From the IMG/VR virus record IMGVR_UViG_3300027747_002221, positions 1 to 64,000 of that record: a stretch of 64,000 nt of DNA; one strand, written 5' to 3'. Below, piece after piece: positions 15,222 through 29,971 of the stretch (its first letter is position 1; every line of letters begins with the position of its first letter). A program made the translations under genes and the position numbers. The notes beneath the pieces are model-generated. The model did not search any database. It worked only from the letters and a program-made list of their open reading frames with translations, and had not been told where the DNA came from.

Positions 15222-18128
15222 TTATTGTAATGCCAATATATATGGTGTCATAACTGCAAACAAACTCTTGTTAAATGTTCTACCATTAATAGTACCTGTT
15301 GCTCTATCTATTAGTAATTCATCACCAATTCTAAAATTACCTTTATGGTCTGTACTGGTATAATAAACAGAGCCACCATTTACGGAAACAACTTCGTATT
15401 CTTGTATTGGTTTTCCGCCATTAAATGGTAAAGCGGCTGTTAAAGAATTGCCTGCACCAACATATTCAAATGTGTGTGTACTTGTTTGTAAATAACTTGC
15501 TCTATGGAAATTGCCAGTACTGTTTGCAAGTGGTCTGTCAACAGCTAATATCTTTTCATCAAAAGTAATTATGCAACTATTTGCAATTAGATTAGTAGTT
15601 TCACCTACCGTATAGAAGTTACGAGTACCATTACTTATATCTGTCCAATTTAAATTAACATAAGCAATAACTTCTGCTCTAATAAAATCTCTATTTGCGA
15701 AAATTATTTTTGTAGCAAGATCAACATTGGAATTAGTATTTGCAGTCAACCCTATTGGCAGAATAGTGGTTTCTAATCCTTGCGGACCGTTTAAAATAAT
15801 ATCTGTAATATCATCTATTCTTGCACGAACTGTTGAAACTTCTGCAGCTGTTACGTTACCTGTGAAGTTTGTGTTTTGCACATATGCTGTTTGATAAGTA
15901 TTTGCTATTGTTTGTTTGTATAAAACTTCATCTATAAATGTTTTAATAAATGCAAATGCGCCAGCTGTCTGTGGTTTTTGGTTTTCAATCTGACTTAATT
16001 CGGAACTATATGCATAATTTAAAATTGCTTTAGTTACAGTTTGTCTATTAGTTTCGTACCCTAAATTACTAGACTTAATATCAAATGTAATTGAATCTAT
16101 AATTTGACCAACGTCCACAAATATAGATTTACCCGGCAAATATGTTGCATATGGATACAAATTACCAAAATACGCTGCAACCTCGGATTGCATGAAATTC
16201 TTGTTTTGCTGCAATAGATTCGCAGCATTTGTCCATGATGCCAATTGCGTATTACCATATCTATTTGGAATTATTTTATCGGTAACTGCAAATATCCCAT
16301 CAACAAATATGCTATTGTACGTACCAAATAGATTAGAAATTGCTCGAGCAGCTGTAGCATCGCCGGGTGCGCCACTAATAATTACCTGATTGTTTGCTGT
16401 TTGATATGGAACTAAAGCACTATTATCCCAAGAAGTACTATTAACAACAACATTCGTTGCTAAGTTCTTTAGATACGTCATTGCATTTTGTACTTCAACA
16501 GTTTGATCTATTAAATTATTTACACCTTGTGACCAATATTGTAGACCAGAAAATCTAGATTGAGTATTACCACCATATGCCAAATCCAAAGCAAAAGAAT
16601 CAACAATTAAACCGGTATCTCTAAAACACTTATCTTGATTATAATTTGCTATTAATATTTTATCATTTAATTTTGGTAAAGTATTACCTAGATATCTTAC
16701 AGTTCTACTTGTTAACTGTTCTAGAATTATACCGCCGTATACTCTAGTACCAACCCCGTCAGCATATAAACCATATGTACCAAACGATGAATTTGAATTT
16801 GTTATAGAGGCAAACCCGCCGGATTCCGCAAGTACAGCATATTGACAACAAATAGTAAATAATGAAACTAATTGCATATAGCCTTGATTCAATAAGTGTA
16901 TACCAATACCACCTTCATTGAATTGTGTAAACGCATCCAATACCATTGACTTTAAACCACCCACATATGCACCATTTACTCTAACGCCTGTGCCTGTAGT
17001 TGTAATTGATGAACAGTTCTGTATGTATGGACTAGTTGTAATATTGCCTGCTGAGCCATCTGGATTATAAGAAAATACTGCAGGACCAGCTTTAACGTTA
17101 TTTGGATTAGCTGCTTCGTGACCTCTAAATGTAAATCCATTTACATATGCGCCTGTGTTCATATAGAACATATCAGATGTTATATTCTGAGGAAATATAT
17201 CGCAAGTTCTTAAATCATTCCCTATTAGAGATACTCTTTTGGGAATAGTGACTGGGTTATTATATAGAGTATACTTACCTGGCATTACATGGACTGACCA
17301 TTTTTCAAAAGTCCTGGATAATGCAGTATGAATATTGGCAACAGCATTTGCCATTGATCTACCATCTAAAGCATCATTGCCACTTGTGGAAACATAAATT
17401 ATGTTTGCATTTTTTCTATTTAATTCTTTTACGATAGGTGAATTTGTTACTCTAGTATTAGTAAAGTATAAATTTGTGTTACCCTCGCGCAAATTATCTG
17501 TAGTTACATTAGCCAGATTAACATTGGATAATAGTTTAGTAATATCTCCAACAATTATAGTACCATTTGCCTGATTATAAACAATCGTTTCGTCGCCAGC
17601 ACTAATTGCTTGTCTAACTCGTTGAAAAGATACGTTAGCAGCTGCTAATGTTATACTAGTTTCTACGCCGGGAGACGTTCCAAGAATTAACCAACCATTT
17701 GAATAAGTGTTGCTACTGTACAGTAGCATTACACTATCGCCAGCACTCTTCAGTGATATCCAGGCATTAGGATATACATTTGAATTATCTGTAGATAGAT
17801 AGACAGAACCACCTGCTACATTTGCAAGTGTAAGTATTTTTACCAAACCATCCGTAGGGCTATTTGGTAAAATCGGTGTTACCGCATAAGGCCCTACATC
17901 AAATTCAGTTCTAGATTTAGTTAAACTAATAGTCTTATTAGTATCGGTGGCCTTAATTAATTGAACACCCTCTAACGTAAGGCCACCTTTTAAAATAGCA
18001 TCAACTATGTTTTTGAAGAAAATATTTGAACCTAACTTTTTGCTTATGCCCCCTTGAACTGCGTAAAAAAACGTGTCATCAGTTATATTGAGAGAGGAGG
18101 CTAAGTCGGATAACTTTAAATCTGCCAT
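15222..18128 (-). CDS. Large virion structural/fibre protein with pectin-lyase-like beta-helix
   Basis: 968 aa; IYVSTSGND, V.PGKY..NPVTIP, SPYIQNCSSI motifs; TDNLREGNTNLYFT motif. Confidence 0.65.
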   Translation of the reverse strand: MADLKLSDLASSLNITDDTFFYAVQGGISKKLGSNIFFKNIVDAILKGGLTLEGVQLIKATDTNKTISLTKSRTEFDVGPYAVTPILPNSPTDGLVKILTLANVAGGSVYLSTDNSNVYPNAWISLKSAGDSVMLLYSSNTYSNGWLILGTSPGVETSITLAAANVSFQRVRQAISAGDETIVYNQANGTIIVGDITKLLSNVNLANVTTDNLREGNTNLYFTNTRVTNSPIVKELNRKNANIIYVSTSGNDALDGRSMANAVANIHTALSRTFEKWSVHVMPGKYTLYNNPVTIPKRVSLIGNDLRTCDIFPQNITSDMFYMNTGAYVNGFTFRGHEAANPNNVKAGPAVFSYNPDGSAGNITTSPYIQNCSSITTTGTGVRVNGAYVGGLKSMVLDAFTQFNEGGIGIHLLNQGYMQLVSLFTICCQYAVLAESGGFASITNSNSSFGTYGLYADGVGTRVYGGIILEQLTSRTVRYLGNTLPKLNDKILIANYNQDKCFRDTGLIVDSFALDLAYGGNTQSRFSGLQYWSQGVNNLIDQTVEVQNAMTYLKNLATNVVVNSTSWDNSALVPYQTANNQVIISGAPGDATAARAISNLFGTYNSIFVDGIFAVTDKIIPNRYGNTQLASWTNAANLLQQNKNFMQSEVAAYFGNLYPYATYLPGKSIFVDVGQIIDSITFDIKSSNLGYETNRQTVTKAILNYAYSSELSQIENQKPQTAGAFAFIKTFIDEVLYKQTIANTYQTAYVQNTNFTGNVTAAEVSTVRARIDDITDIILNGPQGLETTILPIGLTANTNSNVDLATKIIFANRDFIRAEVIAYVNLNWTDISNGTRNFYTVGETTNLIANSCIITFDEKILAVDRPLANSTGNFHRASYLQTSTHTFEYVGAGNSLTAALPFNGGKPIQEYEVVSVNGGSVYYTSTDHKGNFRIGDELLIDRATGTINGRTFNKSLFAVMTPYILALQ

Positions 18129-18843: not shown

Positions 18844-19890
18844 TTAAACTGTCTTAATTGTTCCTAAATGAACATACTGAATGGCCTTGCCATCTTTTTC
18901 TACAGTATACTCAACATAAGGCTCGCCAGAATCAACCATGTAATTTTCGCCTAAAACTTTTCCGCCAGACATACGAATATCTTCGAACTTGCTTTCAAAG
19001 ATTTTCTTGGTCTGTGATTCGATAATTACGTCTGTGTAATTTTCGTTGAATGCTTCTGTAGCAATTGTAACGATTTCTTGTTGGACGTCTTCGCTTGTTT
19101 GTCCAACCATAGATTGTAATGCTCTTAGATAGTCTCCGTATGTGGGATTATCTGTTACTTCTAAAACGAAATCATTATAATTGATAACAGTCTGAGAAAT
19201 ACCTTCCTTCATTGCTTTCTTTTTTGGAGAATGAGGAACACCGGTATCCTTGGGCTGCTTAGGTGGATTCTTAGTATATTCAACACCGGTTTTAGTTTTC
19301 TTAGCAGAATGGCCTGTCAATTCGCCAGGTGCCTTTGGAATTTGACTTGGCATGGACATATCAAATGCAGTACCTTTAGATCTAGATTCTTTTACAGATG
19401 AAGCATCCGATTTAACTTTTTTCTTACCACCCATTTGGTCTTTACCTAAACGACCAGCAATTACATCGCCTCTTGTAACTTTATCATATGGAGGATAGTT
19501 ATTTGCTAAATTACCATCATTACCTTCTTCTACGGTGTCTGCTTCTTCAATAGTTTCGCCATCTTTAATAGCATGCTCGTGCATTTTAGCTTTTTTAATT
19601 TTCATTGCTTCGGTTTGAATTCTGCGATTGCCATCAGGAAATTTAACGTTGTACCAGGAAATGTTTCCATTTTCATCCGGTGCAGCGTGATCTTCGGAGA
19701 TGCATTCACCTTCCCCATATAAAGAATGTTCTACATGAGTAGCGCAATAGTGTGCACCATCTACTCTGCCTTCTTCTACAGAAGCTTCTTCATTCTCAAC
19801 TAATTGTTGAGATTCTCCGCGTCTCACTTTATTAATAGCATCAAATAAGCTATTAGAGATTCTATGGTTTGTTGGATCTGGTAAATTCAT
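18844..19890 (-). CDS. Hypothetical (putative head-associated) protein
   Basis: 348 aa, charged, with repeated hydrophobic-x-E sites (LVE, VEE, IEE). Confidence 0.5.
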   Translation of the reverse strand: MNLPDPTNHRISNSLFDAINKVRRGESQQLVENEEASVEEGRVDGAHYCATHVEHSLYGEGECISEDHAAPDENGNISWYNVKFPDGNRRIQTEAMKIKKAKMHEHAIKDGETIEEADTVEEGNDGNLANNYPPYDKVTRGDVIAGRLGKDQMGGKKKVKSDASSVKESRSKGTAFDMSMPSQIPKAPGELTGHSAKKTKTGVEYTKNPPKQPKDTGVPHSPKKKAMKEGISQTVINYNDFVLEVTDNPTYGDYLRALQSMVGQTSEDVQQEIVTIATEAFNENYTDVIIESQTKKIFESKFEDIRMSGGKVLGENYMVDSGEPYVEYTVEKDGKAIQYVHLGTIKTV

Positions 19891-19914: not shown

Positions 19915-21387
19915 TTATTTATTAAGCCTAATATCGGCCTTTTGCTGGGGAGTGGGTTTGGTTGCAGTTACTTTTTTAATATTGTTAGATATTAAACTTG
20001 CAATACCTTCTTTAATTTTTTGTTCAGGTTGTGCAGTTTGCTGAGACATTTTTTTTGCAGATTCTCTTGCTGCCTGTGCTGCTTCGTGATCTTCACGTTT
20101 TTTCTTTTCATTGTTTAATGCCATTGCCAATCTATCTCTGGCACTATATGCTTCACCCATTTTTAAATTAAGCATTTTAGGTTTAGCCATTTTATTTCGT
20201 ATTCTTTTGGCTTGTGCTACTGCTGGATCTTGATTCTTATGACTATTGATGTAATATACTTGCCTCGATTCGTCGGTATGTTCTACTTCTTCAGGCACAC
20301 AATTCGGAACTTGTTTTCCACCTTTATTTTTTGTACCAATCATTTTATAATTATCCCAGCAAGGATCTTCGCCTTTCATTTTTTTGGCTTCATCTATTTC
20401 ACTCATCATATAATTAGCAACTGTACTAATATAATCTTCTGCAAGAGTAATTTTAGATTGAACCCATTCAGCAATATTAGTATTATCTTCCAACATATCA
20501 TGCACTCGTTGGGCATTGTTAATGATACTTTGTAGTTGACCGCGAGCCATGTCGCCCTCATAGTCATATTCTTCTTTGTCTTTGTCTTCAAAGAATAAAT
20601 CTATATCTTCTTTCATTTGTTGTTTCATAGCCTGACGAGCAAGATGTTTTACGCGACTCATTGGGGTGTGCACTGCACCAGACTTATCTTTTACGGTTCC
20701 ATCACCAGAAGTTTTCTTATATGGACCATCAAATGGAGTATCATTTTTCGTATGATCTTCATTAGCTGTCACGCCTTTCTTTCTGATGCTAAGTTTATCT
20801 GCAGGATTGCCTCCACCAAACATACCGCTAAAAGCATCGCGCGCCTGTTGTTTAGTATCTGTTTTCTGTTGCTTAGCTACTTCTTTTTTATTGGTAATAC
20901 CTTTAAGCATCTTATCAAATTTTACATCGCCGGTTGCTTCCGCCACACCATTCGAATATTCATCGAACTGCGTTGATTCCGCAGAAACTCTCAAAGCCTT
21001 GGCCGTAGGTGCGCCTTTGCTTCCAGGTTTACGCATACGTTCACCAGATCCAGCCTTAATTCTTTTTCTTTTAGCGTGTATATTATCCCATAATCCACGC
21101 TCACCCTCACCAATAACATTTGTATCTTCTGGGTATTCTACGGAGTCACCTGTATATTTTCTACCACCTTGGTAATCTTTACTTGCGCCTGACATTATAC
21201 GGTTAGCATCCTCGTCAGGATATTTGGCTTGTATTCTTTTGTTTTGTTTCATAGCCAAAGAATGCGCTTTGTGCATAGTAGGTAGGTCACCCTTTTTGTA
21301 TGCATCGTTAGAGCGATTGTGCAATTTTTCTTTTCTACTGAGCATATCTGCGTATGCTTCATTTCTTATTTTTGAAAATGTTTTCAT
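19915..21387 (-). CDS. Mosaic putative internal head protein
   Basis: N-terminal MKTFSKIRNEA; modules GLWDNIHAKRKR..., EYDYEGDMA..., DPCWDNYKMIG..VPNCVP. Confidence 0.55.
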   Translation of the reverse strand: MKTFSKIRNEAYADMLSRKEKLHNRSNDAYKKGDLPTMHKAHSLAMKQNKRIQAKYPDEDANRIMSGASKDYQGGRKYTGDSVEYPEDTNVIGEGERGLWDNIHAKRKRIKAGSGERMRKPGSKGAPTAKALRVSAESTQFDEYSNGVAEATGDVKFDKMLKGITNKKEVAKQQKTDTKQQARDAFSGMFGGGNPADKLSIRKKGVTANEDHTKNDTPFDGPYKKTSGDGTVKDKSGAVHTPMSRVKHLARQAMKQQMKEDIDLFFEDKDKEEYDYEGDMARGQLQSIINNAQRVHDMLEDNTNIAEWVQSKITLAEDYISTVANYMMSEIDEAKKMKGEDPCWDNYKMIGTKNKGGKQVPNCVPEEVEHTDESRQVYYINSHKNQDPAVAQAKRIRNKMAKPKMLNLKMGEAYSARDRLAMALNNEKKKREDHEAAQAARESAKKMSQQTAQPEQKIKEGIASLISNNIKKVTATKPTPQQKADIRLNK

Positions 21388-21827
21388 TTCTTACCTCTTA
21401 CTAATCTATCTCTTTGCAATTGCCTTACTTTAGGCAATAGTTTTGTTGGCAAATTATTCATCATAGTCATTACTTTAGATGTTCTTGCTTCAATTGAATT
21501 TTTCTCAGTAGCAGATAGACTTTTCTTGCTTCTACCCTTTAACATTTTTTTTATAATCATTCTTCTGGCATCTGTCTTAGTTCTATTTTTTAGTGTGCCA
21601 AGAGTTGCAGATCTTTTTAATTTGACTTTTCTGGCTAATGCCATTAAAACTTTTCTTGACTTTAATTTCTGACTCTTTTTAATTCGTTCCTTAGCAGAAA
21701 TATCTTCAATAATCATATCTTCTTCATCAAATAAATGTATCACATCTTCCCATTCGAGACTTTCAATCAAAGCATCGATTTCTTCTTCGGTTACTTCTTC
21801 TTTGATAAACTCTTTGAAGGATATCAT
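21384..21827 (-). CDS. Hypothetical basic protein with capsid-targeting-like N-terminus
   Basis: MISFKEFIKEE, then acidic and very basic halves. Confidence 0.55.
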   Translation of the reverse strand: MISFKEFIKEEVTEEEIDALIESLEWEDVIHLFDEEDMIIEDISAKERIKKSQKLKSRKVLMALARKVKLKRSATLGTLKNRTKTDARRMIIKKMLKGRSKKSLSATEKNSIEARTSKVMTMMNNLPTKLLPKVRQLQRDRLVRGKK

Positions 21828-22264
21828 TTTAATGTTGCTTTTAACATCCAGCCGTGTTTTTCGTGAGCAATAATTCTATCCTGTAAGAAATTAGATACAC
21901 CTAACGACGTTGCTTTATCTGCAGCATCGTATGCTCTGTGTAATGATAATAAAACCACATTGTTTGCATCAAGTAAATTTTGCATCATTGTTCTTGCATC
22001 AATTTCAGGATTTTCGTCTTTTGATACTATGGACAAATTATAAATTTTTAATAGATCATATGGAGCATATGCATCCAATGCTCTGAGATGCTCTGCAATG
22101 GTATCTATTACTGCATAAACCTCTGTATAAACCATTTCTAAAAAATGATGATATTGAGGATGATTGGGGCCTTCGACATTCCAATGATACGAATGCGTTT
22201 TAAAATACATTAAATAGGTATCGGCAAATACCCTGTTCATTGCATCAATTAAATCCTGATTCAT
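21824..22264 (-). CDS. dps: Dps/ferritin-like DNA protection protein
   Basis: KTHSYHWNVEGP...HHFLE..Y...DTIAEHLRAL...HEKHGWML ferroxidase signature. Confidence 0.9.
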   Translation of the reverse strand: MNQDLIDAMNRVFADTYLMYFKTHSYHWNVEGPNHPQYHHFLEMVYTEVYAVIDTIAEHLRALDAYAPYDLLKIYNLSIVSKDENPEIDARTMMQNLLDANNVVLLSLHRAYDAADKATSLGVSNFLQDRIIAHEKHGWMLKATLK

Positions 22265-23598
22265 ATATGATCCATTGCCTTGTGTTTTTTCATCTGATTA
22301 TAGGCTGATGTGTGTTGCTGTAATTTTGCCTTAGCTAATTGTGCTTCTGCTTCTTGCTCCATCTTATCTAATTCCGCTGCCTGCACTTCGGGATTGTTTA
22401 TAAATGTTTTGAAGGATACCAACCCCAATGGCTTATCAGGGTAACCCTGGTCGTCTATCGTTTTATCAATACCATTATAAACATTTTTATCAGATGTTAT
22501 ATTAATATCCCTGTGCGCAGTCCTTGGATCAGGAAGACCTCTGGCTACGTCAACAGAATTATCTGAAGATGTGTGCACACCTGTCAAATGATTTTCTGTA
22601 ATTTCAGCAATTCTTTTTCTTAAATTAGACATTGTAATGGTCTCCTTGCCATCGGTACTCTGTACCTCTTTTGAATTATCAGTTTCGTTATTTAAAATCT
22701 GTTCTACTTTTTGCTTAGGCAAAAATAAAACGGGTATTTGTTTTTCCATAATTTTTCTAACAGGTTTAATAATAACGGGAGTTGTCTTAGATGATTCTTT
22801 AATATCTTTGATCCAATGCTTAACGGTTTTTCCTTCTGCTATTTTGATAGTAACATAGGATGACCCTCTAAATACAATAGGCCCCTTGTCACCATTCATT
22901 GCCTCAACAACATCATCTATTTTGTAAATTTGATTGTTTATGTATGTTTCTCTAATAGGATCAATCTCTTCTTTTAAAGGAGCAGCTTTAATATGGCCCA
23001 TGATTTCATTAGCGCTTGCCTTCAACGCATCGGGCAATGCTGATCTAAACTTGGCAGTATTACCTTTACGAGCATATTCTCTAATTTTTGTGCCAGACAT
23101 TCCTGCAACACCTTCCGCATCTGGATCTCGACTACCTGCAGAAACAACTTTTATTGATTTAAATTTATAACTACCATGTGGATATTTTTTACCGTCATTA
23201 TATTGATTGAGCAAATCCTGGTAATCTTTTACTCTATCGCTACCAGCAACCACTACCAAATGCTTGTGGCCTTGTCTGTGCAATCTTGCTGCAGCATGTA
23301 GTATTGTTGGTTCTTCTTTGGAAGAACCCGAAAGTTCTGTACTTGGTTTAACTATATTATGTAAGTAACCAAGTTTTGCTTTTTGAGGTACAGGATTTTT
23401 TGCAGTTCCCTCACTATGGGATGCTACAATATGGGCGGTGCCGCCATGTTGTTGTGCGACTTCCTCAGTCTTATGGATCAATTTCTCATGACCAATCGTA
23501 GGTGGGTTGAAGCGACCAAACGACATTACTGCCGTTGATTCTTCTTCCTTTTCCTTGGCCTTTTTAGCGGCCTCATTTAGGTATTGTTTAAAATCCAT
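22261..23598 (-). CDS. HIGH-type (cytidylyltransferase-like) nucleotidyltransferase domain protein
   Basis: FGRFNPPTIGHEKL, VVAGSDR, MSGTKIR; likely start MDFKQYLNEAA at 23598. Confidence 0.75.
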   Translation of the reverse strand: MDFKQYLNEAAKKAKEKEEESTAVMSFGRFNPPTIGHEKLIHKTEEVAQQHGGTAHIVASHSEGTAKNPVPQKAKLGYLHNIVKPSTELSGSSKEEPTILHAAARLHRQGHKHLVVVAGSDRVKDYQDLLNQYNDGKKYPHGSYKFKSIKVVSAGSRDPDAEGVAGMSGTKIREYARKGNTAKFRSALPDALKASANEIMGHIKAAPLKEEIDPIRETYINNQIYKIDDVVEAMNGDKGPIVFRGSSYVTIKIAEGKTVKHWIKDIKESSKTTPVIIKPVRKIMEKQIPVLFLPKQKVEQILNNETDNSKEVQSTDGKETITMSNLRKRIAEITENHLTGVHTSSDNSVDVARGLPDPRTAHRDINITSDKNVYNGIDKTIDDQGYPDKPLGLVSFKTFINNPEVQAAELDKMEQEAEAQLAKAKLQQHTSAYNQMKKHKAMDHI

Positions 23599-23624
23599 TT
23601 GAATATAATGTTGATGCAACCTAT

Positions 23625-23632
23625 TATTTATA
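23625..23632 (-). promoter_or_regulatory. T4-type late promoter TATAAATA
   Basis: Exact TATAAATA on minus strand upstream of 22261..23598. Confidence 0.6.
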
Positions 23633-23647
23633 TGTTTAGGTATTTGG

Positions 23648-23764
23648 TTATTCCGTGTCTTTGGGTGATTGCTGTTGAGGTTTTGGATTACTAGGTAGCG
23701 GGGGGATAGGGTATGTTTTTTTAGTAGGAAATTTCCTGCCTGGGCGGTGCCTAAACCAACTCAT
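23648..23764 (-). CDS. Small Pro-rich basic ORF (38 aa)
   Basis: MSWFRHRPGRKFPTKKTYPIPPLPSNPKPQQQSPKDTE; GGAG upstream; not in ORF track. Confidence 0.4.
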   Translation of the reverse strand: MSWFRHRPGRKFPTKKTYPIPPLPSNPKPQQQSPKDTE

Positions 23765-23792
23765 ATACTACTCCAAAGTTATCCAAAATGTG

Positions 23793-23821
23793 TTGACTAT
23801 CTATTGACTCGATGTTATACT
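23793..23821 (+). promoter_or_regulatory. Sigma70-type promoter, plus strand (antisense to the region)
   Basis: TTGACT-17 nt-TATACT with TG extended -10. Confidence 0.5.
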
Positions 23822-23847
23822 TGCTATGTACCCTGTTAATACGAGCA

Positions 23848-24282
23848 TTAGCAATTCCACTTGCGTAGCGCTTTATTTATTCTTGAATCTGGGTCATGTG
23901 CAGTCTTCGCAGATGTTAATCTCTTCTTCATACCGCCCATGCGAGCACAAAAGGACTTGCGACGATTTGCTGCTTTACTTCCCTTCTTCAATTTAGATGG
24001 TTTAGTTGTAACAGCAGTTTGCAGATGCGATCCGGGATGTTCTCTTCTGTAGGCCATCACACCTGACTTGGTTAAGCCACCCGCTGGGTTTTTATATTTA
24101 GAATCTTGCCAATCCTCGGCTAAACCAAAAAGAATATCGTCATCCATATCTTTGTAGTGTTCCCAAAGAGCTTCGGAGTCAATACCTTGTTCTGCGGATA
24201 AAGTCTCTATATAGTCTTCTACTACATCAAACAATTCATCTAGTATTGTTTTTTCTTTAAGGTAAGATTTGAAATTTATCAT
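23848..24282 (-). CDS. Conserved phage protein (DUF6321-like) with capsid-targeting-like N-terminus
   Basis: MINFKSYLKEK; KNPAGGLT..G...RRKSFCARM...DPDSRINKALRKWNC. Confidence 0.6.
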   Translation of the reverse strand: MINFKSYLKEKTILDELFDVVEDYIETLSAEQGIDSEALWEHYKDMDDDILFGLAEDWQDSKYKNPAGGLTKSGVMAYRREHPGSHLQTAVTTKPSKLKKGSKAANRRKSFCARMGGMKKRLTSAKTAHDPDSRINKALRKWNC

Positions 24283-25457
24283 TTGTTTAGATTCTGACCA
24301 GAGAATCCCTCTTTGCTTCGGTTAACAACTTTAGATACAGAGCCATCTTTGTATCCAACGACAAACCCTTCTGGTTTAGCTTGTTTGCCGTTAATAGTAT
24401 GTTCCTGATTTTGACCGCTCATTTCTAATCTATCGAGTAATACATTCTTTGCCTTATCTAAACTCTTATGAGCATTAAATAGGTGTTGGAATTGATCCTT
24501 GTTCTCTTCTACTTCATGAACCATGCTATCATGGTGTGTTAGTTTCTTTTGCTTGGCAGCTGCAGTCTTTACCTTGTCAACGTCTTTTTGAAGTTTTTCC
24601 GATAGGTGTTTCTTATATCCTGCAGGATTTGGTTGTGTACCTTCTCTTACAGTTTTATTTATGTATGTCTGTAAATGCTCAGAGTGTCCTTCAACCAAGC
24701 CATCGTGGTCTCTTATTTTTGCAAAGGATTCTTTTGCATTATTAAAATGTTTTTTAAATTCTGCTTGATGTTCTGGGGTATAATTAATATTTCCTCTGTT
24801 TAACTTATTATTAAATACGTGCACATCAGGGCTAGCATGTTCAAATTTACTAGTATCAATATTGTATTCTCTTTGATCACCGTGTAGTCTAGTATGCAGA
24901 GCAACACTAATCTTAGCATTCTTTAATTTTTTCCCCTCGTCTGAATCTGCAGGAATAGAATATTTAATTAGTTGTTCTTTAGTGGACATTCTATTTCCTT
25001 TTTCTGGAAATATAGTCTTGTCTTTTTTACTGCCCATGAAGTCGCCTTGCACAACTCCATCTAACGGTGACATTATCTTTTTACCGTGCTCTAATAGTTG
25101 AGCCATTTTACCATGGAGACCGGGTTTGTCTCCAAACTTTTCTTTTAAATCTTTTTCATTAAAAGAATATCCTTTGGATGCACCTTTATATGCCACACCA
25201 AATTCTTTTTTGCCTGTATGAGAATTTATTACATGTCCCATTTCAAAAGAGGGGGAACCGTCTGCTTTAATACCTACTCTTGATACGTTGGATGGTTCAC
25301 CTTTGGCAAATTTATGTAGTTGTTCTAATCTATCTAAATCTGTATTTGATCTTGCTTTACCGTAGAAATGCTCTTCGCCTGCTAGATGTGTTAGATGTTT
25401 AATTGCGCCTGTTGTTGCTGCCGCGGCTTCAGCTAAAAATTCTGAAAATTCTATCAT
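24279..25457 (-). CDS. RNA-ligase-like covalent nucleotidyltransferase-fold protein (DUF6267-like)
   Basis: IKADG (KxDG motif I), VVQGDF (III), EGFVV (IV), KVVNR (V); N-terminal MIEFSEFLAEAA. Confidence 0.6.
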   Translation of the reverse strand: MIEFSEFLAEAAAATTGAIKHLTHLAGEEHFYGKARSNTDLDRLEQLHKFAKGEPSNVSRVGIKADGSPSFEMGHVINSHTGKKEFGVAYKGASKGYSFNEKDLKEKFGDKPGLHGKMAQLLEHGKKIMSPLDGVVQGDFMGSKKDKTIFPEKGNRMSTKEQLIKYSIPADSDEGKKLKNAKISVALHTRLHGDQREYNIDTSKFEHASPDVHVFNNKLNRGNINYTPEHQAEFKKHFNNAKESFAKIRDHDGLVEGHSEHLQTYINKTVREGTQPNPAGYKKHLSEKLQKDVDKVKTAAAKQKKLTHHDSMVHEVEENKDQFQHLFNAHKSLDKAKNVLLDRLEMSGQNQEHTINGKQAKPEGFVVGYKDGSVSKVVNRSKEGFSGQNLNK

Positions 25458-26644
25458 TGTGCTAGCTCTTTATTATGTTTGTCTAACAACTTCTTAACTT
25501 CTTGAGCATGATCTGCCTGAGATACATCTCTATGAAGATCTGGTAAAGTTGTAGATAGATTGGAATATTCTTTCATAACACTATGCTTTGGTCTGTGAAT
25601 AACTTGTGTCTTTCCGCTTTGTGTAGCAGCTATATTTATTTTACCATCCAATCTATCTAAATCTTTATTATCTAGATGTCCTAATGTTGTTACGCCTTTT
25701 AGATCATTATTATCACCGATAGTAAAAGTAGTTCCTTTATCTTTGTCTTTATTATGAATGTGTAGTGCATTAACTTTACTACTTTCAAGATATGCTCTTG
25801 TTGTTCCCTTAGGTGCATCTGTACTAAAACCATTTTCAATTACACCATTGGAATGATTTTCGTTTAGGTATTGTAGTATAGGTTTCCCGCCAACTTTAAC
25901 CTTAGATAAAGATTTTGCTAATGTTGGGTGCGTAAATTTCCATGTACGAGTCTTTTGATCAAAGTTTGCTGCCGATTGACCCATCTTTCCTCTATCTAAT
26001 TTTGATTCACCTTCAATTCTTGAGAACGGAGTCTTTATTTGTTCTTTCGGTGCTTCTTCTGAAACTTGTTTAACAACTCCTGAAAGTTTCTTTTTAGCTT
26101 TCTGACCTTTACCTTCATCGTGAGAAACGAAATCAATAGCAGTACCTGTAGAACCAGCAGATGCTGTTCCAAAGTTCTTTGCAATTCTTCCCTCAACATC
26201 AAAGCCACCTTTGGTGATTGGTGCTTTCTTTAATTCTTTAGGTGGTGCTAATTTTGATTGAGGTATTTCGCCGTGTTGTTCTGTAGATAATAATATTCTA
26301 CCTTGGTCATCGTGTCTCGCACCAGTAACTCGTACAGCAGTTCCTGCTTCGTGTGCGCCATGCGCACTTGCTAAAGTATGTGTAGTTGATTTTTTATCTT
26401 CATTATAATTTTCCCCGTGTTCGTTTTTGAACTCATCAGGTTTCATATATCTGGCAAAATTCGCAGTTACCTTCTTTCGTTGCTCTTTACTAAGAGTCGG
26501 CATTACGTAATTTCTGAGATGCCGAAGGCCTTTCTTTTCACTATCATTAATATTACCCGACATATTCTCGCGCTGGGCTTCTGATAGTAATGAATTTACT
26601 ATAATAGGAGATTCTTTAAGAAAAGCTTTGAAAGAATTGATCAT
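25454..26644 (-). CDS. Hypothetical protein, possible PD-(D/E)xK nuclease-like fold
   Basis: GFDVE...AIDF...EGESK..KMGQ; N-terminal MINSFKAFLKES. Confidence 0.45.
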   Translation of the reverse strand: MINSFKAFLKESPIIVNSLLSEAQRENMSGNINDSEKKGLRHLRNYVMPTLSKEQRKKVTANFARYMKPDEFKNEHGENYNEDKKSTTHTLASAHGAHEAGTAVRVTGARHDDQGRILLSTEQHGEIPQSKLAPPKELKKAPITKGGFDVEGRIAKNFGTASAGSTGTAIDFVSHDEGKGQKAKKKLSGVVKQVSEEAPKEQIKTPFSRIEGESKLDRGKMGQSAANFDQKTRTWKFTHPTLAKSLSKVKVGGKPILQYLNENHSNGVIENGFSTDAPKGTTRAYLESSKVNALHIHNKDKDKGTTFTIGDNNDLKGVTTLGHLDNKDLDRLDGKINIAATQSGKTQVIHRPKHSVMKEYSNLSTTLPDLHRDVSQADHAQEVKKLLDKHNKELAQ

Positions 26645-26673
26645 GGGTGTTCCATTCGAATTAAATTATATAA

Positions 26674-26681
26674 TATTTATA
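26674..26681 (-). promoter_or_regulatory. T4-type late promoter TATAAATA
   Basis: Exact match upstream of 25454..26644. Confidence 0.65.
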
Positions 26682-26698
26682 CCTACGTATACCGAGAC

Positions 26699-26724
26699 AA
26701 AAAAAGGGCGACCGAAGTCGCCCT
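26699..26724 (-). terminator. Intrinsic terminator with UUCG loop
   Basis: AGGGCGAC-TTCG-GTCGCCCT followed by T7 on minus strand. Confidence 0.85.
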
Positions 26725-26745
26725 GAAGTTACTTTTGGGGGAATA

Positions 26746-27309
26746 CTAAATTTTTTGTGCCCAGGCCTTAATAACCGGATGCAAAATATCGTCAGTGTAG
26801 TCCATTTTCATAGTATTCACAATTGCTAGAACAATTTGAATATTGCCTTTAACATACCCCTTACTTGAACTGATGCGATCTACGCTAGGGCGGAATGGAT
26901 TACGTTTCTTTTTGGTACCTAATTCCATACTGAAATCAATACCTGTTAGTGTACACTTGCTTTTACATTCATCAAATACCTTTTGAATATATTCAGGAGT
27001 AAGATTAAATCCCATTACTCGCCCATCTTTAGCTTTTGCTTTAACTCGATTCTTTAAGGCAGTAAATTCAAGCTTACCAAAGTTTTCAGGTAATGCTTTT
27101 TTTGCTCTTGCAACTTCTCGTACTTTTTTACGAATAGCTTCTTTTTGTGCAGGAGTAATTTTCTCTTTATTCTTTTGGTAGTTCCATTTACCAAATGCTG
27201 TTGCCATCTCAGCTTCTTTGTCGGTTAATGGACGTGCATCTAATGCTCTGATTTGATGAAAACGCTTTGCTTCTTTACGGATTGCTGGATCTTCAAAATT
27301 ATATGTCAT
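26746..27309 (-). CDS. Free-standing HNH-like (His-Me finger) endonuclease
   Basis: CTLTGIDF...PSVDRISSSKGYVKGNIQIV..IVNTMK. Confidence 0.6.
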   Translation of the reverse strand: MTYNFEDPAIRKEAKRFHQIRALDARPLTDKEAEMATAFGKWNYQKNKEKITPAQKEAIRKKVREVARAKKALPENFGKLEFTALKNRVKAKAKDGRVMGFNLTPEYIQKVFDECKSKCTLTGIDFSMELGTKKKRNPFRPSVDRISSSKGYVKGNIQIVLAIVNTMKMDYTDDILHPVIKAWAQKI

Positions 27310-27761: not shown

Positions 27762-28004
27762 TTATCCATTTCTATGATGTCTGCTCTGGCGGTTGCCTTT
27801 TGCATAGGTCTTCAAATACTCAATACCTACTGTACCGTCTTCAATTTCTTCCAACGCTCGCAGAATATTGCTTCTTGCATCACTATGCTTTTCCTTTTTT
27901 AGTTCTCGTGCTCTTGCAGTAGCAACCAAAACCATATCATACCGATTGCCTATTTTACGTACGGCATCTTCTGATGTATACCTACCCCGATCTAGATCTT
28001 TCAT
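27762..28004 (-). CDS. rpoZ: RNA polymerase omega subunit homolog
   Basis: TSEDAVRKIGNRYDMVLVATARAREL...ALEEIEDG vs E. coli [26 protein letters not shown]...ALREIEEG. Confidence 0.85.
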   Translation of the reverse strand: MKDLDRGRYTSEDAVRKIGNRYDMVLVATARARELKKEKHSDARSNILRALEEIEDGTVGIEYLKTYAKGNRQSRHHRNG

Positions 28005-28017: not shown

Positions 28018-28094
<77 letters not shown>

Positions 28095-28265
28095 AATTTA
28101 TTTAATTGTTTTCGTTACTATTAGTTTGTTGTTCGTTATATTGTTGAAGACGCATTTCAAATTGTTCTTCAGTCAAATTATGCCAACCTATACAAACTCC
28201 TGTTGGGCTACGACCACACCCGCATTGGGTATTTACTTCTGTCAAAGTATCTCTTGGATTAACTA

Positions 28266-28511
28266 TCATTCCATCTCCTTCTTTTTAATTTTCATTCCAA
28301 CAAATGTTCCAAAAAATGCACCTAGAATAGCAGGAATCATTAACCAATGATTCGTTGTATAATTTATAATAGCTATACTACCTAGCACATAGCAAGCCAC
28401 TGCCCATATACTAGCTTTTAATACTTGATTATGCTGTACATATCTTAAGTAATATGTATAAACTATATCGAGTAAAAAAATAGCTATAAATGTTGTTACA
28501 TAATCTATCAT
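28266..28511 (-). CDS. Small membrane protein
   Basis: Real start MIDYVTT at 28511 (the longer ORF overlaps tRNA-Leu); three hydrophobic segments. Confidence 0.6.
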   Translation of the reverse strand: MIDYVTTFIAIFLLDIVYTYYLRYVQHNQVLKASIWAVACYVLGSIAIINYTTNHWLMIPAILGAFFGTFVGMKIKKKEME

Positions 28512-28516
28512 ATTTT

Positions 28517-28602
28517 TGGTACCAGAGACGGGACTCGAACCCGTATGCCCTTGCGAGCGGCAGATTTTAAGTCTGCTGTGTATACCATTCCACCACTCTG
28601 GC
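28517..28602 (-). tRNA. tRNA-Leu(TAA)
   Basis: GCAGA-CTTAAAA-TCTGC, long variable arm, CCA. Confidence 0.92.
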
Positions 28603-28642
28603 ATTTGCTTATTATAAACTCTTTAGCTAAAAAGAACAATCT

Positions 28643-28933
28643 TTAGTCATCCAAAACATGATCCGCAACAGGCGAAACCTTATCCAAATAATTCTCTTTA
28701 TATCTTTTCTTTGATTCTTCCATATCAATGGAAATGCCAACTGAATCTTTTACTACAGTATAAACGGAATGCATAATCTTTTGTACCATTCTTTTTGCCA
28801 TGTCATCTATTACTTTATACGGATCGTCACCTGTTGCAATTCTTTGGAGAGCAAATCCATATTCATATTTACGAACTCGATCTACCCATTCTTCGAAAGT
28901 TTCATCTGGTTTTATTCTGATTACGTTGGACAT
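28643..28933 (-). CDS. Stand-alone glutamyl-tRNA reductase (HemA) dimerization-domain-like protein
   Basis: RVRKYEYGFALQRIATGDDPYKVIDDMAKRMVQKIMH fits the HemA C-terminal pattern RxxExxxAxxxLAxGxDPxxVLxxLxxxLxxKLxH. Confidence 0.6.
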   Translation of the reverse strand: MSNVIRIKPDETFEEWVDRVRKYEYGFALQRIATGDDPYKVIDDMAKRMVQKIMHSVYTVVKDSVGISIDMEESKKRYKENYLDKVSPVADHVLDD

Positions 28934-28939
28934 TCATTT

Positions 28940-29302
28940 TTAATCTTTAATTTGGCTATCGCCTGGCATTACTCTATAGTTATCTTCCACAGAATCTGGC
29001 GTGGAGACTTCTATAACTGTACCTGCTTCAATACACTCTAATTGGTGTGGCATACAAGGAACATTGTGCCATACCGCACCTTCATGCAATTCTTTTTCGA
29101 GAACTTCTGCTGTCATAGTATCAATCCAACGAACAATAAACTTGCCACTTTGTATGTACCAGGTTTCTTCTTTGTCTTTATGGAAGTGCATACTAAACTT
29201 AGCGCCCGCGTTGAAGTTCATAAACTTTCCGCAATATTTGTCATTGGTAGCCCAGATTAATTCTGAACCCCAACCTTTTGTAACCAAACCTGTTAATCTC
29301 AT
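28940..29302 (-). CDS. Cupin domain protein
   Basis: KGWGSELIW...FSMHFHKDKEETW...PHQL...EVST. Confidence 0.75.
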   Translation of the reverse strand: MRLTGLVTKGWGSELIWATNDKYCGKFMNFNAGAKFSMHFHKDKEETWYIQSGKFIVRWIDTMTAEVLEKELHEGAVWHNVPCMPHQLECIEAGTVIEVSTPDSVEDNYRVMPGDSQIKD

Positions 29303-29317
29303 TAAACTTCCTAACTA

Positions 29318-29391
29318 TGGAGCGGGATAGGAGAATCGAACTCCTGACTTGAACTTGGAAGGATCTCGTTTTACCACTAAACTAACCCCGC
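29318..29391 (-). tRNA. tRNA-Gly(TCC)
   Basis: Cloverleaf, CTTCCAA loop, CCA. Confidence 0.9.
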
Positions 29392-29883
29392 TTATGCTGC
29401 TAGCGCCGCCATAGCCATGACCTCTTTTAATCGGTCCGCGGCATAACTTGCGGCAAACGCATTTGGTTTAACCATAGGTACTACGTTACACATACCTTTG
29501 ATATAACCAACTGCTTGTTGAATAACTATAGAACTATTATAACATTCTTTAGGATTAATGTCAAGATGAATTTGAACTTCCTTGTCACCTATAACATCTG
29601 CTTCTAAAAGTTTGTGATATAATTCTGCAACTTTGTAAACTTCTGTCATTAGACGCATAGATGGTTTCCCCGCTTTTGCATCAAAGTCTATTTCAGTTTG
29701 TATTTCTCCAAAAATCTTACAACCATGGCATCCATCGATATGGACTACAATCGCAAGGGTATAATCTGCATACCATTTTCCATTGCGTCTATAGCGTTCG
29801 GAGTCTGCTCCTAAATATATTTTAGTTTCAGGACTTTGTTCTGCAATAAATCTTGTTACTTCAGCTATATCAATTTTTTTCAT
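29392..29883 (-). CDS. RNase H-like YkuK/DUF458 family protein
   Basis: IYLGADS...E..K...IHLDIN...KPNAFAASYAAD. Confidence 0.7.
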   Translation of the reverse strand: MKKIDIAEVTRFIAEQSPETKIYLGADSERYRRNGKWYADYTLAIVVHIDGCHGCKIFGEIQTEIDFDAKAGKPSMRLMTEVYKVAELYHKLLEADVIGDKEVQIHLDINPKECYNSSIVIQQAVGYIKGMCNVVPMVKPNAFAASYAADRLKEVMAMAALAA

Positions 29884-29897
29884 AGTAGCACCTTTTG

Positions 29898-29971
29898 TGG
29901 AGCGGGTAGCGAGAATCGAACTCGCGAATAAACCTTGGCAAGGTTTCAGGTTACCATTACATCATACCCGC
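29898..29971 (-). tRNA. tRNA-Gly(GCC)
   Basis: AAACC-TTGCCAA-GGTTT, CCA. Confidence 0.92.

What the first reader, a model, noticed from the sequence alone, without database searches (positions are those of the whole stretch)
19915..26644. Six clustered proteins share a T4 capsid-targeting-like N-terminus: a predicted injected-protein cargo locus
Seen: the N-termini are MKTFSKIRNEA, MISFKEFIKEE, MDFKQYLNEAA, MINFKSYLKEK, MIEFSEFLAEAA and MINSFKAFLKES. Exact TATAAATA late promoters lie at 26674 and 23625. Established: T4 internal proteins carry a ~10-aa capsid-targeting sequence (IPIII-type MKTYQEFIAE) that is cleaved after Glu by gp21, and they are ejected into the host. Inference: these otherwise unrelated proteins, several of them enzyme-like, are packaged and delivered with the genome, probably for host takeover or anti-defence.
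Basis: partly seen in the sequence, partly recalled or inferred. Interest (0 to 1): 0.8.

Follow-up and report, generated by a model that had tools for sequence, protein, structure and literature searches.

The report
T4-type capsid-targeting leaders on enzymes
A freshwater T4-like phage puts nearly the same ten-residue "pack me into the head" tag that phage T4 uses on six otherwise unrelated basic proteins, two of them enzymes, which probably explains why such enzymes turn up inside virions of related aquatic phages.

Summary
Six of the seven minus-strand genes in 19915-26644 start with M-x(1-3)-F-x-x-[F/Y/I]-[L/I/R]-x-E. This matches the T4 IPII/IPIII capsid-targeting sequence at the four positions mapped in T4: 4 and 7 for targeting, 8 and 10 for processing.

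- **Not chance:** a scoring matrix trained only on leaders of one protein family ranks five of the six genes first among 1540 candidate starts. It also ranks T4 ipII/ipIII first in T4 DNA.
- **A separable module:** it is kept at peptide level, not nucleotide level, on orthologues down to 35% identity. Some homologues lack it, and shuffled domains follow it in relatives.
- **Assembly machinery:** the same 222-kb contig encodes a T4 portal, an S77 prohead protease, a gp22-type scaffold and gp23.
- **Promoters and charge:** TATAAATA boxes lie 26-30 nt upstream of both operons and are conserved in 14 of 16 related loci. All six proteins are basic; their leaderless neighbours are acidic.
- **Virion evidence from relatives:** leader-bearing homologues of the cytidylyltransferase/NMNAT-like protein were detected by mass spectrometry in cyanophage virions.

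Cleavage, ejection and the proteins' function are inferred, not shown. One leader, on the 490-aa protein, is atypical. I class this as a new member of a known kind.

The parts
26699..26723 (-). G+C-rich hairpin plus T-run. Likely the terminator of the upstream HNH-like gene (26746-27309); it marks the upstream boundary of the locus.
   Evidence: Read directly from the sequence.
26674..26681 (-). T4-type late promoter box TATAAATA, 29 nt upstream of the ATG of the first operon.
   Evidence: A box lies 28-30 nt upstream of the orthologous first gene where that gene is found in the related loci.
25454..26644 (-). Cargo 1: 396-aa basic protein (mature pI 9.5). No known family; function unknown. 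Leader MINSFKAFLKE is encoded at 26612-26644.
   Evidence: 39 homologues keep the leader, followed by a variable linker and then a conserved core. The AF2 model has pLDDT 82 and no significant PDB fold match.
24279..25457 (-). Cargo 2: 392-aa DUF6267 protein, probably a ligase/capping-type nucleotidyltransferase. Leader MIEFSEFLAE is encoded at 25428-25457.
   Evidence: PF19782, E=1.7e-45. K64-x-D66-G67, E363-G364 and K376 are invariant. In the AF2 model (pLDDT 90.6) the leader is a separate low-confidence helix followed by a disordered linker.
23848..24282 (-). Cargo 3: 144-aa basic protein with a C-terminal DUF6321 domain. Leader MINFKSYLKE is encoded at 24253-24282.
   Evidence: PF19846, E=2.4e-19. 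In relatives the same domain follows the leader directly (98 aa) or follows other inserted modules (175 and 191 aa).
23625..23632 (-). Second TATAAATA late promoter box, 26 nt upstream of ATG 23598.
   Evidence: A box lies 26-30 nt upstream of the orthologous gene in 14 of the 16 related loci.
22261..23598 (-). Cargo 4: 445-aa cytidylyl/adenylyl-transferase-like (NMNAT-like) enzyme. Leader MDFKQYLNE is encoded at 23572-23598.
   Evidence: PF01467 at 21.7 bits (cutoff 21); phrog_395 and phrog_3041 'cytidyltransferase', E=1e-44 to 1e-53. Catalytic motifs are invariant across 14 homologues. Homologues S-CREM2 gp154 and S-SCSM1 ORF91 carry the leader and were found in virions by mass spectrometry.
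21824..22264 (-). Dps/ferritin-like gene inside the second operon. It has NO leader and is acidic (pI 5.6). Listed as a member of the locus, not as CTS cargo.
   Evidence: PF00210, E=2.6e-22. Conserved at the same position in relatives. pI.
21384..21827 (-). Cargo 5: 147-aa protein with an acidic N-terminal half and a very basic C-terminal half (mature pI 10.2, 25% K+R). The most T4-IP-like of the set. Leader MISFKEFIKE is encoded at 21798-21827.
   Evidence: Most orthologues in ten related loci keep the leader.
19915..21387 (-). Cargo 6: 490-aa K-rich mosaic protein (mature pI 9.35). Atypical leader MKTFSKIRNE is encoded at 21358-21387.
   Evidence: PSSM score is only 0.6. Relatives carry MK[T/S]F[K/S]x[L/I]RE in front of different module combinations. 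Small shared phage modules are seen in phrog hits.

Best explanation
The locus is a two-operon cassette, transcribed late, of capsid-internal cargo proteins in a freshwater T4-like myovirus.

**Proposed mechanism.**
1. Each of six proteins is made with a roughly 10-residue N-terminal leader that is the functional equivalent of the T4 capsid-targeting sequence (CTS).
2. The leader's aromatic and hydrophobic face (positions 4 and 7) docks the protein onto the gp22-type scaffolding core while the prohead assembles.
3. The S77 (gp21-type) prohead protease then cuts after the conserved Glu of the [L/I]-x-E motif.
4. This releases 15-54 kDa basic mature proteins, which stay inside the head with the DNA and leave with it at infection.

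**The cargo.** It includes a functionally coupled enzyme pair that is fused into one protein in many phages: a DUF6267 ligase-like nucleotidyltransferase and an NMNAT-like adenylyl/cytidylyl-transferase. These would be active in the host before any phage gene is expressed.

**What is shown.** The motif and its non-random occurrence; its match to T4 at the mapped positions; its modular presence or absence; the protease, scaffold and portal genes in the same genome; the promoter placement; the basic charge; and virion detection of leader-bearing homologues in cultured cyanophages.

**What is inferred.** Scaffold docking, cleavage at the Glu, ejection, and what the enzymes do in the host.
For: 1. 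**Match to T4.** T4 IPII/IPIII begin MKTYQEFIAEA and IPI begins MKTFKEF, against the window leaders. From 42 distinct leaders in relatives the consensus is M-x(1-3)-F-K-x-[F/Y]-[L/I]-x-E-[A/E/D]. T4 mutagenesis assigns positions 4 and 7 to targeting and 8 and 10 to processing (PMC9026906).
2. **Statistics.** Regex; PSSM top five of 1540 starts; T4 ipII/ipIII rank first with the same PSSM; low background in 660 kb.
3. **Selection at peptide level.** Phe is coded by TTT/TTC, Leu by CTT/TTA/CTA and Glu by GAA/GAG; the upstream DNA is unrelated.
4. **Modularity.**
   - 88 of 120 close DUF6267 homologues and 78 of 149 diverse ones carry the leader. Others, including cyanophage S-CAM1, begin directly at the core.
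   - The linker between leader and core varies from about 3 to 90 aa.
   - The DUF6321 and other modules are shuffled behind a constant leader.
   - hhalign between the 396-aa family and the unrelated first gene of phage Melnitz aligns only the 11-aa leader.
   - The AF2 model shows the leader as a detached low-confidence helix plus a disordered linker.
5. **Machinery in the same contig.** Portal_T4, Peptidase_S77, T4_CASP and Gp23, with L-F-E|T where T4 gp23 has L-T-E|A.
6. **Late promoters.** Boxes are conserved 26-30 nt upstream of both operons.
7. **Charge.** All six are basic (pI 9.0-10.2), against 9 of 63 other window proteins with pI above 9; Mann-Whitney p=8e-5.
8. **Virions.** S-CREM2 gp154 (MKNFSSFLTEA..., TATAAATA upstream) and S-SCSM1 ORF91 (MKSFLQFLKEA...) are homologues of the window enzyme (E=3e-27 and 4e-39) and were detected in purified virions. 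In S-SCSM1, ORFs 89-93, 95 and 97 of the syntenic locus are annotated as virion proteins.
Against: - There is no direct evidence for this phage: no virion proteome and no N-terminal peptide showing cleavage.
- The authors of the published cyanophage proteomes caution that abundant non-structural proteins might co-purify with virions.
- Four of the six proteins are 42-54 kDa, much larger than T4 IPI-III. It is not shown that proteins of this size pass through this phage's tail.
- The 490-aa protein's leader departs from the consensus (I7, R8, Glu one residue later) and scores near background.
- TATAAATA is not enriched in the window as a whole.
- I did not locate the late sigma factor gene in the parts of the contig I read.
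- The Dps gene in the same operon lacks the leader, so membership of the operon does not by itself mean packaging.
Confidence: 0.8

Rival explanations
1. The leader does target the proteins into the prohead, but they act as internal structural, DNA-condensing or assembly components (like a scaffold or inner body). They are not effectors that act in the next host; the enzyme domains are incidental or work inside the head.
For: All six are basic, and one (147 aa) has a histone-like K/R-rich half. A 209-aa basic protein with a leader-like start lies between the portal and protease genes in the head module. No function in the host has been shown.
Against: The catalytic motifs of the nucleotidyltransferase are invariant, as is K-x-D-G in DUF6267, across distant homologues. 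This argues that enzyme activity is under selection. The same enzymes exist without the leader in other phages, so they have a role outside the head. From established knowledge of T4: its CTS-bearing IPs and the packaged Alt enzyme are ejected and act in the host.
Confidence: 0.12
2. The shared N-terminus is not a packaging signal. It could be a common recognition tag for another process, such as a degron, a chaperone or protease-regulated activation, membrane association, or a translation-initiation feature of late mRNAs.
For: Nothing in the sequence proves scaffold binding. The motif is short and forms an amphipathic helix, a shape used for many purposes.
Against: Synonymous codon variation and unrelated upstream DNA rule out a nucleotide-level signal. 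There is no hydrophobic stretch typical of secretion or membrane signals. The match to the T4 CTS falls at exactly the four experimentally mapped positions. Leader-bearing homologues are found in virions. The motif is restricted to T4-like phages that encode the S77 protease and gp22 scaffold.
Confidence: 0.06
3. The similarity is an accident of descent. The six genes would be diverged paralogues, or recent 5'-end gene-conversion products that merely retain a common start, with no selected function.
For: The genes are adjacent. From my own knowledge of the T-even literature: recombination at CTS-coding 5' ends has been proposed for T-even IP loci.
Against: There is no detectable similarity among the mature parts. 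The 21-nt cores average only 58% nucleotide identity, with different codons for the conserved residues. The leader is conserved on each orthologue family separately, down to 27-35% protein identity and across marine, estuarine and freshwater phages.
Confidence: 0.02

Closest known systems
T4 internal proteins IPI, IPII, IPIII and their capsid-targeting sequence (CTS)
   Same: - An N-terminal leader of about 10 residues with the same key residues: aromatic at 4, aromatic/hydrophobic at 7, L/I at 8, Glu at 10.
- Several leaders in relatives even begin MKTF/MKTY-like.
- Otherwise unrelated basic proteins.
- A late promoter.
- A gp21-type S77 protease and a gp22 scaffold in the same genome.
- Gene content that varies between relatives behind a constant leader.

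   Different: - The host phage belongs to a distant aquatic lineage; its nearest cultured relatives are classified in Kyanoviridae, not Straboviridae.
- The six genes are clustered in two operons between gp41 and the tail-fibre genes. In the T4 record ipI lies about 7 kb from ipII and ipIII.
- Four cargo proteins are 42-54 kDa and two are enzymes, whereas T4 IPI-III are 10-21 kDa non-enzymes.
- Cleavage and ejection are not demonstrated here.
T4 Alt (packaged ADP-ribosyltransferase) and engineered CTS-fusion enzymes (CTS-nuclease, CTS-GFP, IPIII-beta-galactosidase)
   Same: A large enzyme carried in a T4-type head, processed by gp21 and delivered with the DNA. The engineered fusions show that the 10-residue CTS alone is enough to package foreign enzymes (PMC9026906).
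   Different: As I recall the T4 literature, Alt does not use the IPIII-type CTS. The CTS-enzyme fusions are man-made. Here, natural enzymes appear to carry the tag.
Virion-associated NMNAT/cytidylyltransferase-like proteins of cyanomyoviruses (S-CBWM1, S-SZBM1, S-SCSM1, S-CREM2)
   Same: Homologous to the window's 445-aa protein (E=3e-27 and 4e-39). For the two I read, S-CREM2 gp154 and S-SCSM1 ORF91, the leader is the same. In S-SCSM1 the gene sits in the syntenic position after gp41 and MazG. Both were detected by mass spectrometry in purified virions.
   Different: Those papers report the presence of the proteins but give no targeting mechanism, and they leave open co-purification. They interpret the protein as an NAD-synthesis enzyme. 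The window protein's substrate is not established: its PF01467 score is marginal and its NCBIfam NadR hit is far below threshold.
Ejection/inner-body proteins of giant phages (phiKZ, 201phi2-1, SPN3US)
   Same: Many head-internal proteins are processed after Glu by a gp21-related protease and ejected (PMC9026906).
   Different: They use a different cleavage motif (S/A-x-E), have no T4-type CTS at the extreme N-terminus, and form an inner body or bolus.

Membership tests
T4-type CTS-bearing capsid-internal proteins | An extreme N-terminal leader of about 10 residues that matches the T4 IPIII CTS at the mapped positions: 4 and 7 (targeting), 8 and 10 (processing). | tested here: met
   Five of six match fully. 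The 490-aa protein matches at F4, I7 and the Glu but has R8 and one extra residue.
T4-type CTS-bearing capsid-internal proteins | The genome encodes the gp21-type (Peptidase_S77) prohead protease and the gp22-type scaffolding core that the CTS binds. | tested here: met
   On the same contig, L116 carries PF03420 Peptidase_S77, PF25623 T4_CASP, PF07230 Portal_T4 and PF07068 Gp23.
T4-type CTS-bearing capsid-internal proteins | The leader is removed by cleavage after the Glu during head maturation. | not testable with these tools
   Only the [L/I]-x-E motif and a variable, disordered linker after it are seen. The supplements of the published proteomes hold no peptide-level data.
T4-type CTS-bearing capsid-internal proteins | The protein is present in mature virions. 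| not testable with these tools
   Not testable for this uncultured phage. Leader-bearing homologues of one cargo family were detected by mass spectrometry in S-CREM2 and S-SCSM1 virions.
T4-type CTS-bearing capsid-internal proteins | The protein is ejected into the host with the DNA. | not testable with these tools
   No data.
T4-type CTS-bearing capsid-internal proteins | Late expression from a T4-type late promoter. | tested here: inconclusive
   TATAAATA lies 26-30 nt upstream of both operons and is conserved in relatives. Timing was not measured. RNA-library contigs show presence only. I did not find the late sigma gene in the regions I read.
T4-type CTS-bearing capsid-internal proteins | Small, basic, DNA-associated proteins, as T4 IPI-III are. 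| tested here: inconclusive
   Basic: met for 6 of 6 (pI 9.0-10.2). Small: met for only two (15-16 kDa); four are 42-54 kDa.
Pfam DUF6267 (PF19782) | Score above the Pfam gathering threshold over the full domain. | tested here: met
   156.4 bits against a cutoff of 27, covering residues 20-391. The family has 2778 clusters at 50% identity.
Covalent nucleotidyltransferases (ATP/NAD-dependent RNA/DNA ligases, capping enzymes), considered for DUF6267 | Motif I K-x-D-G with the catalytic Lys, plus downstream acidic, EG and Lys motifs. | tested here: met
   K64, D66, G67, E363, G364 and K376 are invariant in 32 sequences down to 36% identity.
Covalent nucleotidyltransferases (ATP/NAD-dependent RNA/DNA ligases, capping enzymes), considered for DUF6267 | Significant sequence-profile or fold similarity to a known ligase. 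| tested here: inconclusive
   - The Foldseek top PDB hit is T. brucei RNA-editing ligase 1, but at E=0.3.
- BFVD RNA ligase 2 hits have E about 0.02.
- ESM-Atlas named neighbours are mostly PF09414 RNA_ligase, at scores of 0.71-0.76.
- hhalign against T4 Rnl2 was negative.
- A PDB profile search found nothing.
Cytidylyltransferase-like / NMNAT-type nucleotidyltransferases (PF01467), for the 445-aa protein | A Pfam hit, plus the (H/T)-x-G-H motif and the second S-x-T/x-x-x-R motif. | tested here: met
   PF01467 scores 21.7 bits against a cutoff of 21 (marginal). PHROG 'cytidyltransferase' families hit at E=1e-44 to 1e-53. G28, R29, N31, P32, G36, H37, S168 and R173 are invariant in 14 homologues. 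Substrate (NMN or other) was not tested; the NCBIfam NadR hit is far below its cutoff.
PD-(D/E)xK nucleases, considered for the 396-aa protein | A conserved E...D...E-x-K on the characteristic alpha/beta core. | tested here: inconclusive
   E151, D171, E213 and K215 are conserved. However, E213 and K215 lie in a segment with pLDDT below 50, and Foldseek finds no nuclease (best E=0.19 to unrelated folds). I do not file it as a nuclease.

The most novel reading that the evidence does not exclude
The tag pre-loads the capsid with a coupled enzyme pair, often fused into one protein in other phages: a ligase-like nucleotidyltransferase (DUF6267) and an NMNAT-like adenylyltransferase. The pair would be injected with the DNA and act before any phage transcription, for example by rebuilding NAD+ or resealing RNA or DNA damaged by host abortive-infection systems (NAD+-depleting defences, anticodon nucleases). 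If so, counter-defence enzymes delivered by the virion would be a widespread trait of aquatic T4-like phages. The conserved tag would also let injected proteins be predicted from sequence alone across thousands of uncultured phage genomes.
Probability: 0.2. Interest if true: 0.8.

Novelty: new member of a known kind. Interest (0 to 1): 0.6.

Why it matters
- **It offers a mechanism for an open observation.** Several cyanophage virion proteomes contain NMNAT/cytidylyltransferase-like enzymes. Their authors could not say whether these are really packaged or how. A conserved T4-type targeting tag on exactly those proteins gives a concrete, testable answer.
- **The T4 CTS appears conserved far beyond the T-even phages.** It is near-identical in freshwater, estuarine and marine T4-like phages that share only about 25-40% identity in the cargo proteins compared here. 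This suggests the scaffold-tag interaction is ancient.
- **It gives a sequence-only predictor of virion-delivered proteins in uncultured aquatic phages.** In relatives, leader-bearing proteins include a putative ligase, nucleotidyltransferases, an ATP-grasp enzyme and many unknowns.
- **It gives function-unknown families a starting hypothesis.** DUF6267 (2778 clusters), DUF6321 and the 396-aa family all gain one.
- **It suggests a natural protein-delivery tag for engineering non-model phages.**

Tried and rejected
- **Megablast** of the locus against 50,697 phage records found no match. The phage is known only from metagenomes.
- **PDB sequence and profile searches** with DUF6267, the 445-aa protein and the 396-aa family found nothing meaningful.
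- **hhalign of the DUF6267 profile against T4 Rnl2** was negative, so the ligase assignment stays a lead.
- **The PD-(D/E)xK idea for the 396-aa protein** is not supported by the model or by Foldseek. The ESM-Atlas search gave only weak leads.
- **Retrieving this contig's head module with Melnitz gp21** through the search for related loci failed: the 80 returned loci were other phages. I got it instead by walking the contig with four look-ups.
- **The 159-aa gene upstream of gp47** was tested as a possible gp55 late sigma factor. It has no similarity to the S-CREM2 sigma factor.
- **The exhaustive profile search** listed only the 150 strongest hits, so it could not show whether annotated ligases sit in the weak tail.
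- **Supplements of the two proteome papers** hold no peptide lists, so N-terminal processing could not be read from published data.
- **Metatranscriptome contigs** show the locus in RNA libraries but give no transcript ends or strand.
- **A strict regex in Melnitz** missed degenerate leaders (MKKFSEIIEA, MKNFKNHIAEE). A single fixed pattern undercounts cargo.
- **One repeated tblastn** added nothing beyond.

Full report
**What the window is.** The window is the first 64 kb of a 222,055-bp contig from a freshwater lake metagenome (JGI 3300027747; IMG/VR UViG_3300027747_002221). It belongs to a T4-like myovirus. It carries gp43 DNA polymerase (40450-42942), UvsX (38507-39586), gp41 helicase (36867-38270), a clamp loader (47592-48533) and tail-fibre genes (13178-18128). 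No cultured phage matches it at nucleotide level. The nearest cultured relatives at protein level are the Methylophilales phages Melnitz and the T4-like cyanophages, which NCBI places in Kyanoviridae.

**The observation.** The span holds seven genes in two translationally coupled blocks.
- Block 1: 26644 to 23848, encoding the 396-aa protein, the 392-aa DUF6267 protein and the 144-aa DUF6321 protein.
- Block 2: 23598 to 19915, encoding the 445-aa cytidylyltransferase-like protein, a 146-aa Dps/ferritin, a 147-aa protein and a 490-aa protein.

Only the Dps gene lacks the leader. TATAAATA lies at 26674-26681 and 23625-23632 (minus strand), 29 and 26 nt upstream of the first ATG of each block. 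The first box follows a terminator-like hairpin. The mechanical ORF list starts the 445-aa gene at an upstream TTG. The promoter box lies inside that extension and all orthologues start at MDF/MNF, so ATG 23598 is the real start.

**Is it more than chance?** Four tests say yes.
- A loose pattern applied to every possible start in six frames of the window gives nine hits. Six are these genes and three are non-ATG, non-genic ORFs.
- A still looser pattern gives only eight hits, none credible, in 660 kb of other T4-like phage loci.
- A position-specific matrix trained only on the leaders of DUF6267-family proteins from elsewhere ranks five of the six genes as the top five of 1540 candidate starts in 99.7 kb of this contig.
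- The same matrix, applied to 31 kb of T4 DNA, ranks ipIII and ipII first of 424 starts.

The sixth leader (MKTFSKIRNEA, 490 aa) scores near background. Relatives of that protein carry a recognisable variant, MK[T/S]F[K/S]x[L/I]RE. A 209-aa basic protein between the portal and protease genes of the same contig carries the same variant.

**Comparison with T4.** I read the T4 sequences from the T4 record rather than from memory. IPII and IPIII begin MKTYQEFIAEA and IPI begins MKTFKEF. A review of the T4 work states that only the first ten residues of IPIII are needed for encapsidation. It also states that residues 4 and 7 matter most for targeting and residues 8 and 10 for processing, and that Asp at position 10 blocks processing but not targeting (PMC9026906). 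The consensus of 42 distinct leaders from this phage group is M-x(1-3)-F-K-x-[F/Y]-[L/I]-x-E-[A/E/D]. The conserved positions are therefore exactly those four.

**The leader is a separable module under peptide-level selection.**
- The conserved residues use different codons in the six genes, and the upstream DNA is unrelated. The constraint is on the peptide.
- The six mature proteins have no BLAST similarity to each other.
- Within DUF6267, 88 of 120 close homologues and 78 of 149 diverse homologues carry the leader at residue 1. Many others, including the cyanophage S-CAM1 homologue, begin directly at the conserved core.
- The spacer between leader and core varies from about 3 to about 90 residues. 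It is predicted to be disordered, and the leader forms a detached low-confidence helix.
- In related contigs the DUF6321 domain follows the leader directly (98 aa) or after different inserted modules (144, 175 and 191 aa). Other unrelated proteins of 200-257 aa carry the same leader.
- A profile comparison between the 396-aa family and the unrelated first gene of the Melnitz locus aligns the 11-residue leader and nothing else.

**The machinery the tag needs.** I walked along the contig with four look-ups. At 91-97 kb I found Portal_T4, three small genes, Peptidase_S77 (gp21), a T4_CASP scaffold (gp22) and Gp23. Gp23 has L-F-E|T where T4 gp23 has L-T-E|A, and the protease itself has L-V-E|A near its N-terminus. 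That T4 gp21 prefers [L/I]-x-E is my own recollection of the T4 literature. The held review confirms only that it cleaves C-terminal to Glu.

**Other correlates.**
- All six leader proteins are basic (mature pI 9.0-10.2, net charge +4 to +17). The leaderless Dps and the adjacent 348-aa protein are acidic.
- Across 69 window proteins, 6 of 6 leader proteins have pI above 9, against 9 of 63 others (Mann-Whitney p=8e-5).
- The TATAAATA boxes keep their position 26-30 nt upstream in 14 of 16 related loci of 52-94% identity.
- Two lake metatranscriptome libraries hold short contigs identical to parts of the locus. This shows presence in RNA libraries only.

**Experimental support from relatives.** Cyanophage papers report NMNAT/cytidylyltransferase-like proteins in CsCl-purified virions of S-CBWM1, S-SZBM1, S-SCSM1 and S-CREM2. 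They note that the mechanism is unknown and that co-purification is not excluded (PMC10665884, PMC9602691).
- S-CREM2 gp154 begins MKNFSSFLTEA, has TATAAATA upstream, and matches the window's 445-aa protein at E=3e-27.
- S-SCSM1 ORF91 begins MKSFLQFLKEA and matches at E=4e-39. It sits in the syntenic locus after gp41 and MazG, and ORFs 89-93, 95 and 97 there are annotated as virion proteins.
- S-RIM8 gp184 and the P-SSM3 cytidyltransferase also carry the leader.
- Phage Melnitz carries it on at least four locus proteins and on a RimK-like ATP-grasp enzyme.

I found no paper in the held library that links the CTS to cyanophages or other aquatic T4-like phages, and none that mentions DUF6267. 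Subscription literature could not be searched.

**What the cargo is.**
- *445-aa protein.* It is a PF01467-type nucleotidyltransferase. The Pfam score is marginal but the PHROG hits are strong. The GR-NP...GH and S...R motifs are invariant. Its substrate is not established.
- *DUF6267 protein.* It is modelled with high confidence (pLDDT 90.6). It has an invariant K-x-D-G plus E-G and Lys motifs. Its weak but concordant neighbours are RNA ligases. A direct profile comparison with T4 Rnl2 was negative. I therefore call it a probable ligase/capping-type nucleotidyltransferase, at moderate confidence only.
- *The two enzymes are a pair.* They are adjacent here and fused, in either order, in many phages.
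- *396-aa protein.* It has a well-conserved His-rich core but no detectable relatives of known function. A PD-(D/E)xK idea was not borne out.
- *147-aa protein.* It has an acidic half and a very basic half, and most resembles a classical internal protein.
- *490-aa protein.* It is a K-rich mosaic of small phage modules.

**Mechanism, with status of each step.**
1. Late transcription from two TATAAATA promoters. The sequence is shown; the timing is inferred.
2. Translation with an N-terminal amphipathic leader. Shown.
3. Docking of the leader on the gp22-type core during prohead assembly. Inferred by analogy with T4.
4. Cleavage after the Glu by the S77 protease. Inferred: the motif and the protease are present.
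5. Retention of the basic mature proteins with the DNA. Inferred: homologues are found in virions.
6. Ejection and early action in the host. Inferred from T4 IPs and Alt.

**Verdict.** Cleavage, ejection and function remain open, and one leader is atypical. I class this as a new member of a known kind: T4-type CTS-directed capsid cargo. It extends that kind to aquatic T4-like phages and to natural enzyme cargo, and it offers a mechanism for published virion-proteome observations.

Noticed in passing
window 28018-33784 (-): A block of 25 tRNA genes sits directly upstream of the cargo locus. They cover most amino acids.
   Followed up: no
window 27762-28004 (-): An 80-aa gene matches the RNA polymerase omega/Rpb6 family (PF01192, E=4e-11). 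A phage-encoded omega-like subunit is unusual.
   Followed up: no
window 21824-22264 (-): A Dps/ferritin-like gene is embedded in the second cargo operon. It lacks the leader, is acidic, and is conserved at the same position in seven related contigs. Why a DNA-protecting, iron-binding protein is co-transcribed with capsid cargo is unexplained.
   Followed up: partly
window 18844-19890 (-): The 348-aa acidic protein just downstream has its own conserved N-terminal motif in relatives (...SLF[D/E]xIxK[V/I]..GE). It is different from the CTS and may be another kind of N-terminal signal.
   Followed up: partly
L116:4149-4778 (+) = contig 94903-95532, outside the window: A 209-aa basic protein lies between the portal and S77 protease genes and begins MKKFKELRES. 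This is the same variant leader class as the 490-aa protein's relatives. A loose leader-pattern scan of 80 head-module loci from other T4-like phages found no leader-bearing gene there.
   Followed up: partly
L028:82-1131 (+) (Methylophilales phage Melnitz-3, MZ577098): A RimK-like ATP-grasp enzyme, annotated with a TTG start, begins MTQKFSQFITEE and scores 16.4 with the leader matrix. It is a further candidate enzyme cargo, located away from the main locus.
   Followed up: partly
window 2527-12693 (-): Four radical-SAM-domain genes lie in a stretch of 26-28% G+C rising to about 33%, below the 32-43% of the rest of the window.
   Followed up: no
window 48549-64000 and on to about 81 kb of the contig (L111, L114, L115): An island of about 30 kb encodes sugar-nucleotide epimerases, glycosyltransferases, methyltransferases, an aminotransferase, TPP-enzyme halves and NTP-transferases, inserted between the replication genes and gp46/gp47. 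It may serve DNA or surface glycan modification.
   Followed up: no
window 21300-26800: Two lake metatranscriptome libraries hold short contigs 100% identical to parts of the locus. Two others hold 90-97% identical relatives. This shows presence in RNA libraries only; there is no strand or end information.
   Followed up: partly
window 23620-23848 (-): A Pro-rich ORF of about 38 aa sits in the gap between the two operons, upstream of the second promoter box.
   Followed up: no
DUF6267 family (P0112, P0113, P0124, P0261 and alignment A3): DUF6267 is fused to the cytidylyltransferase-like domain in many phages, in either order. This links the two adjacent cargo enzymes functionally.
   Followed up: partly
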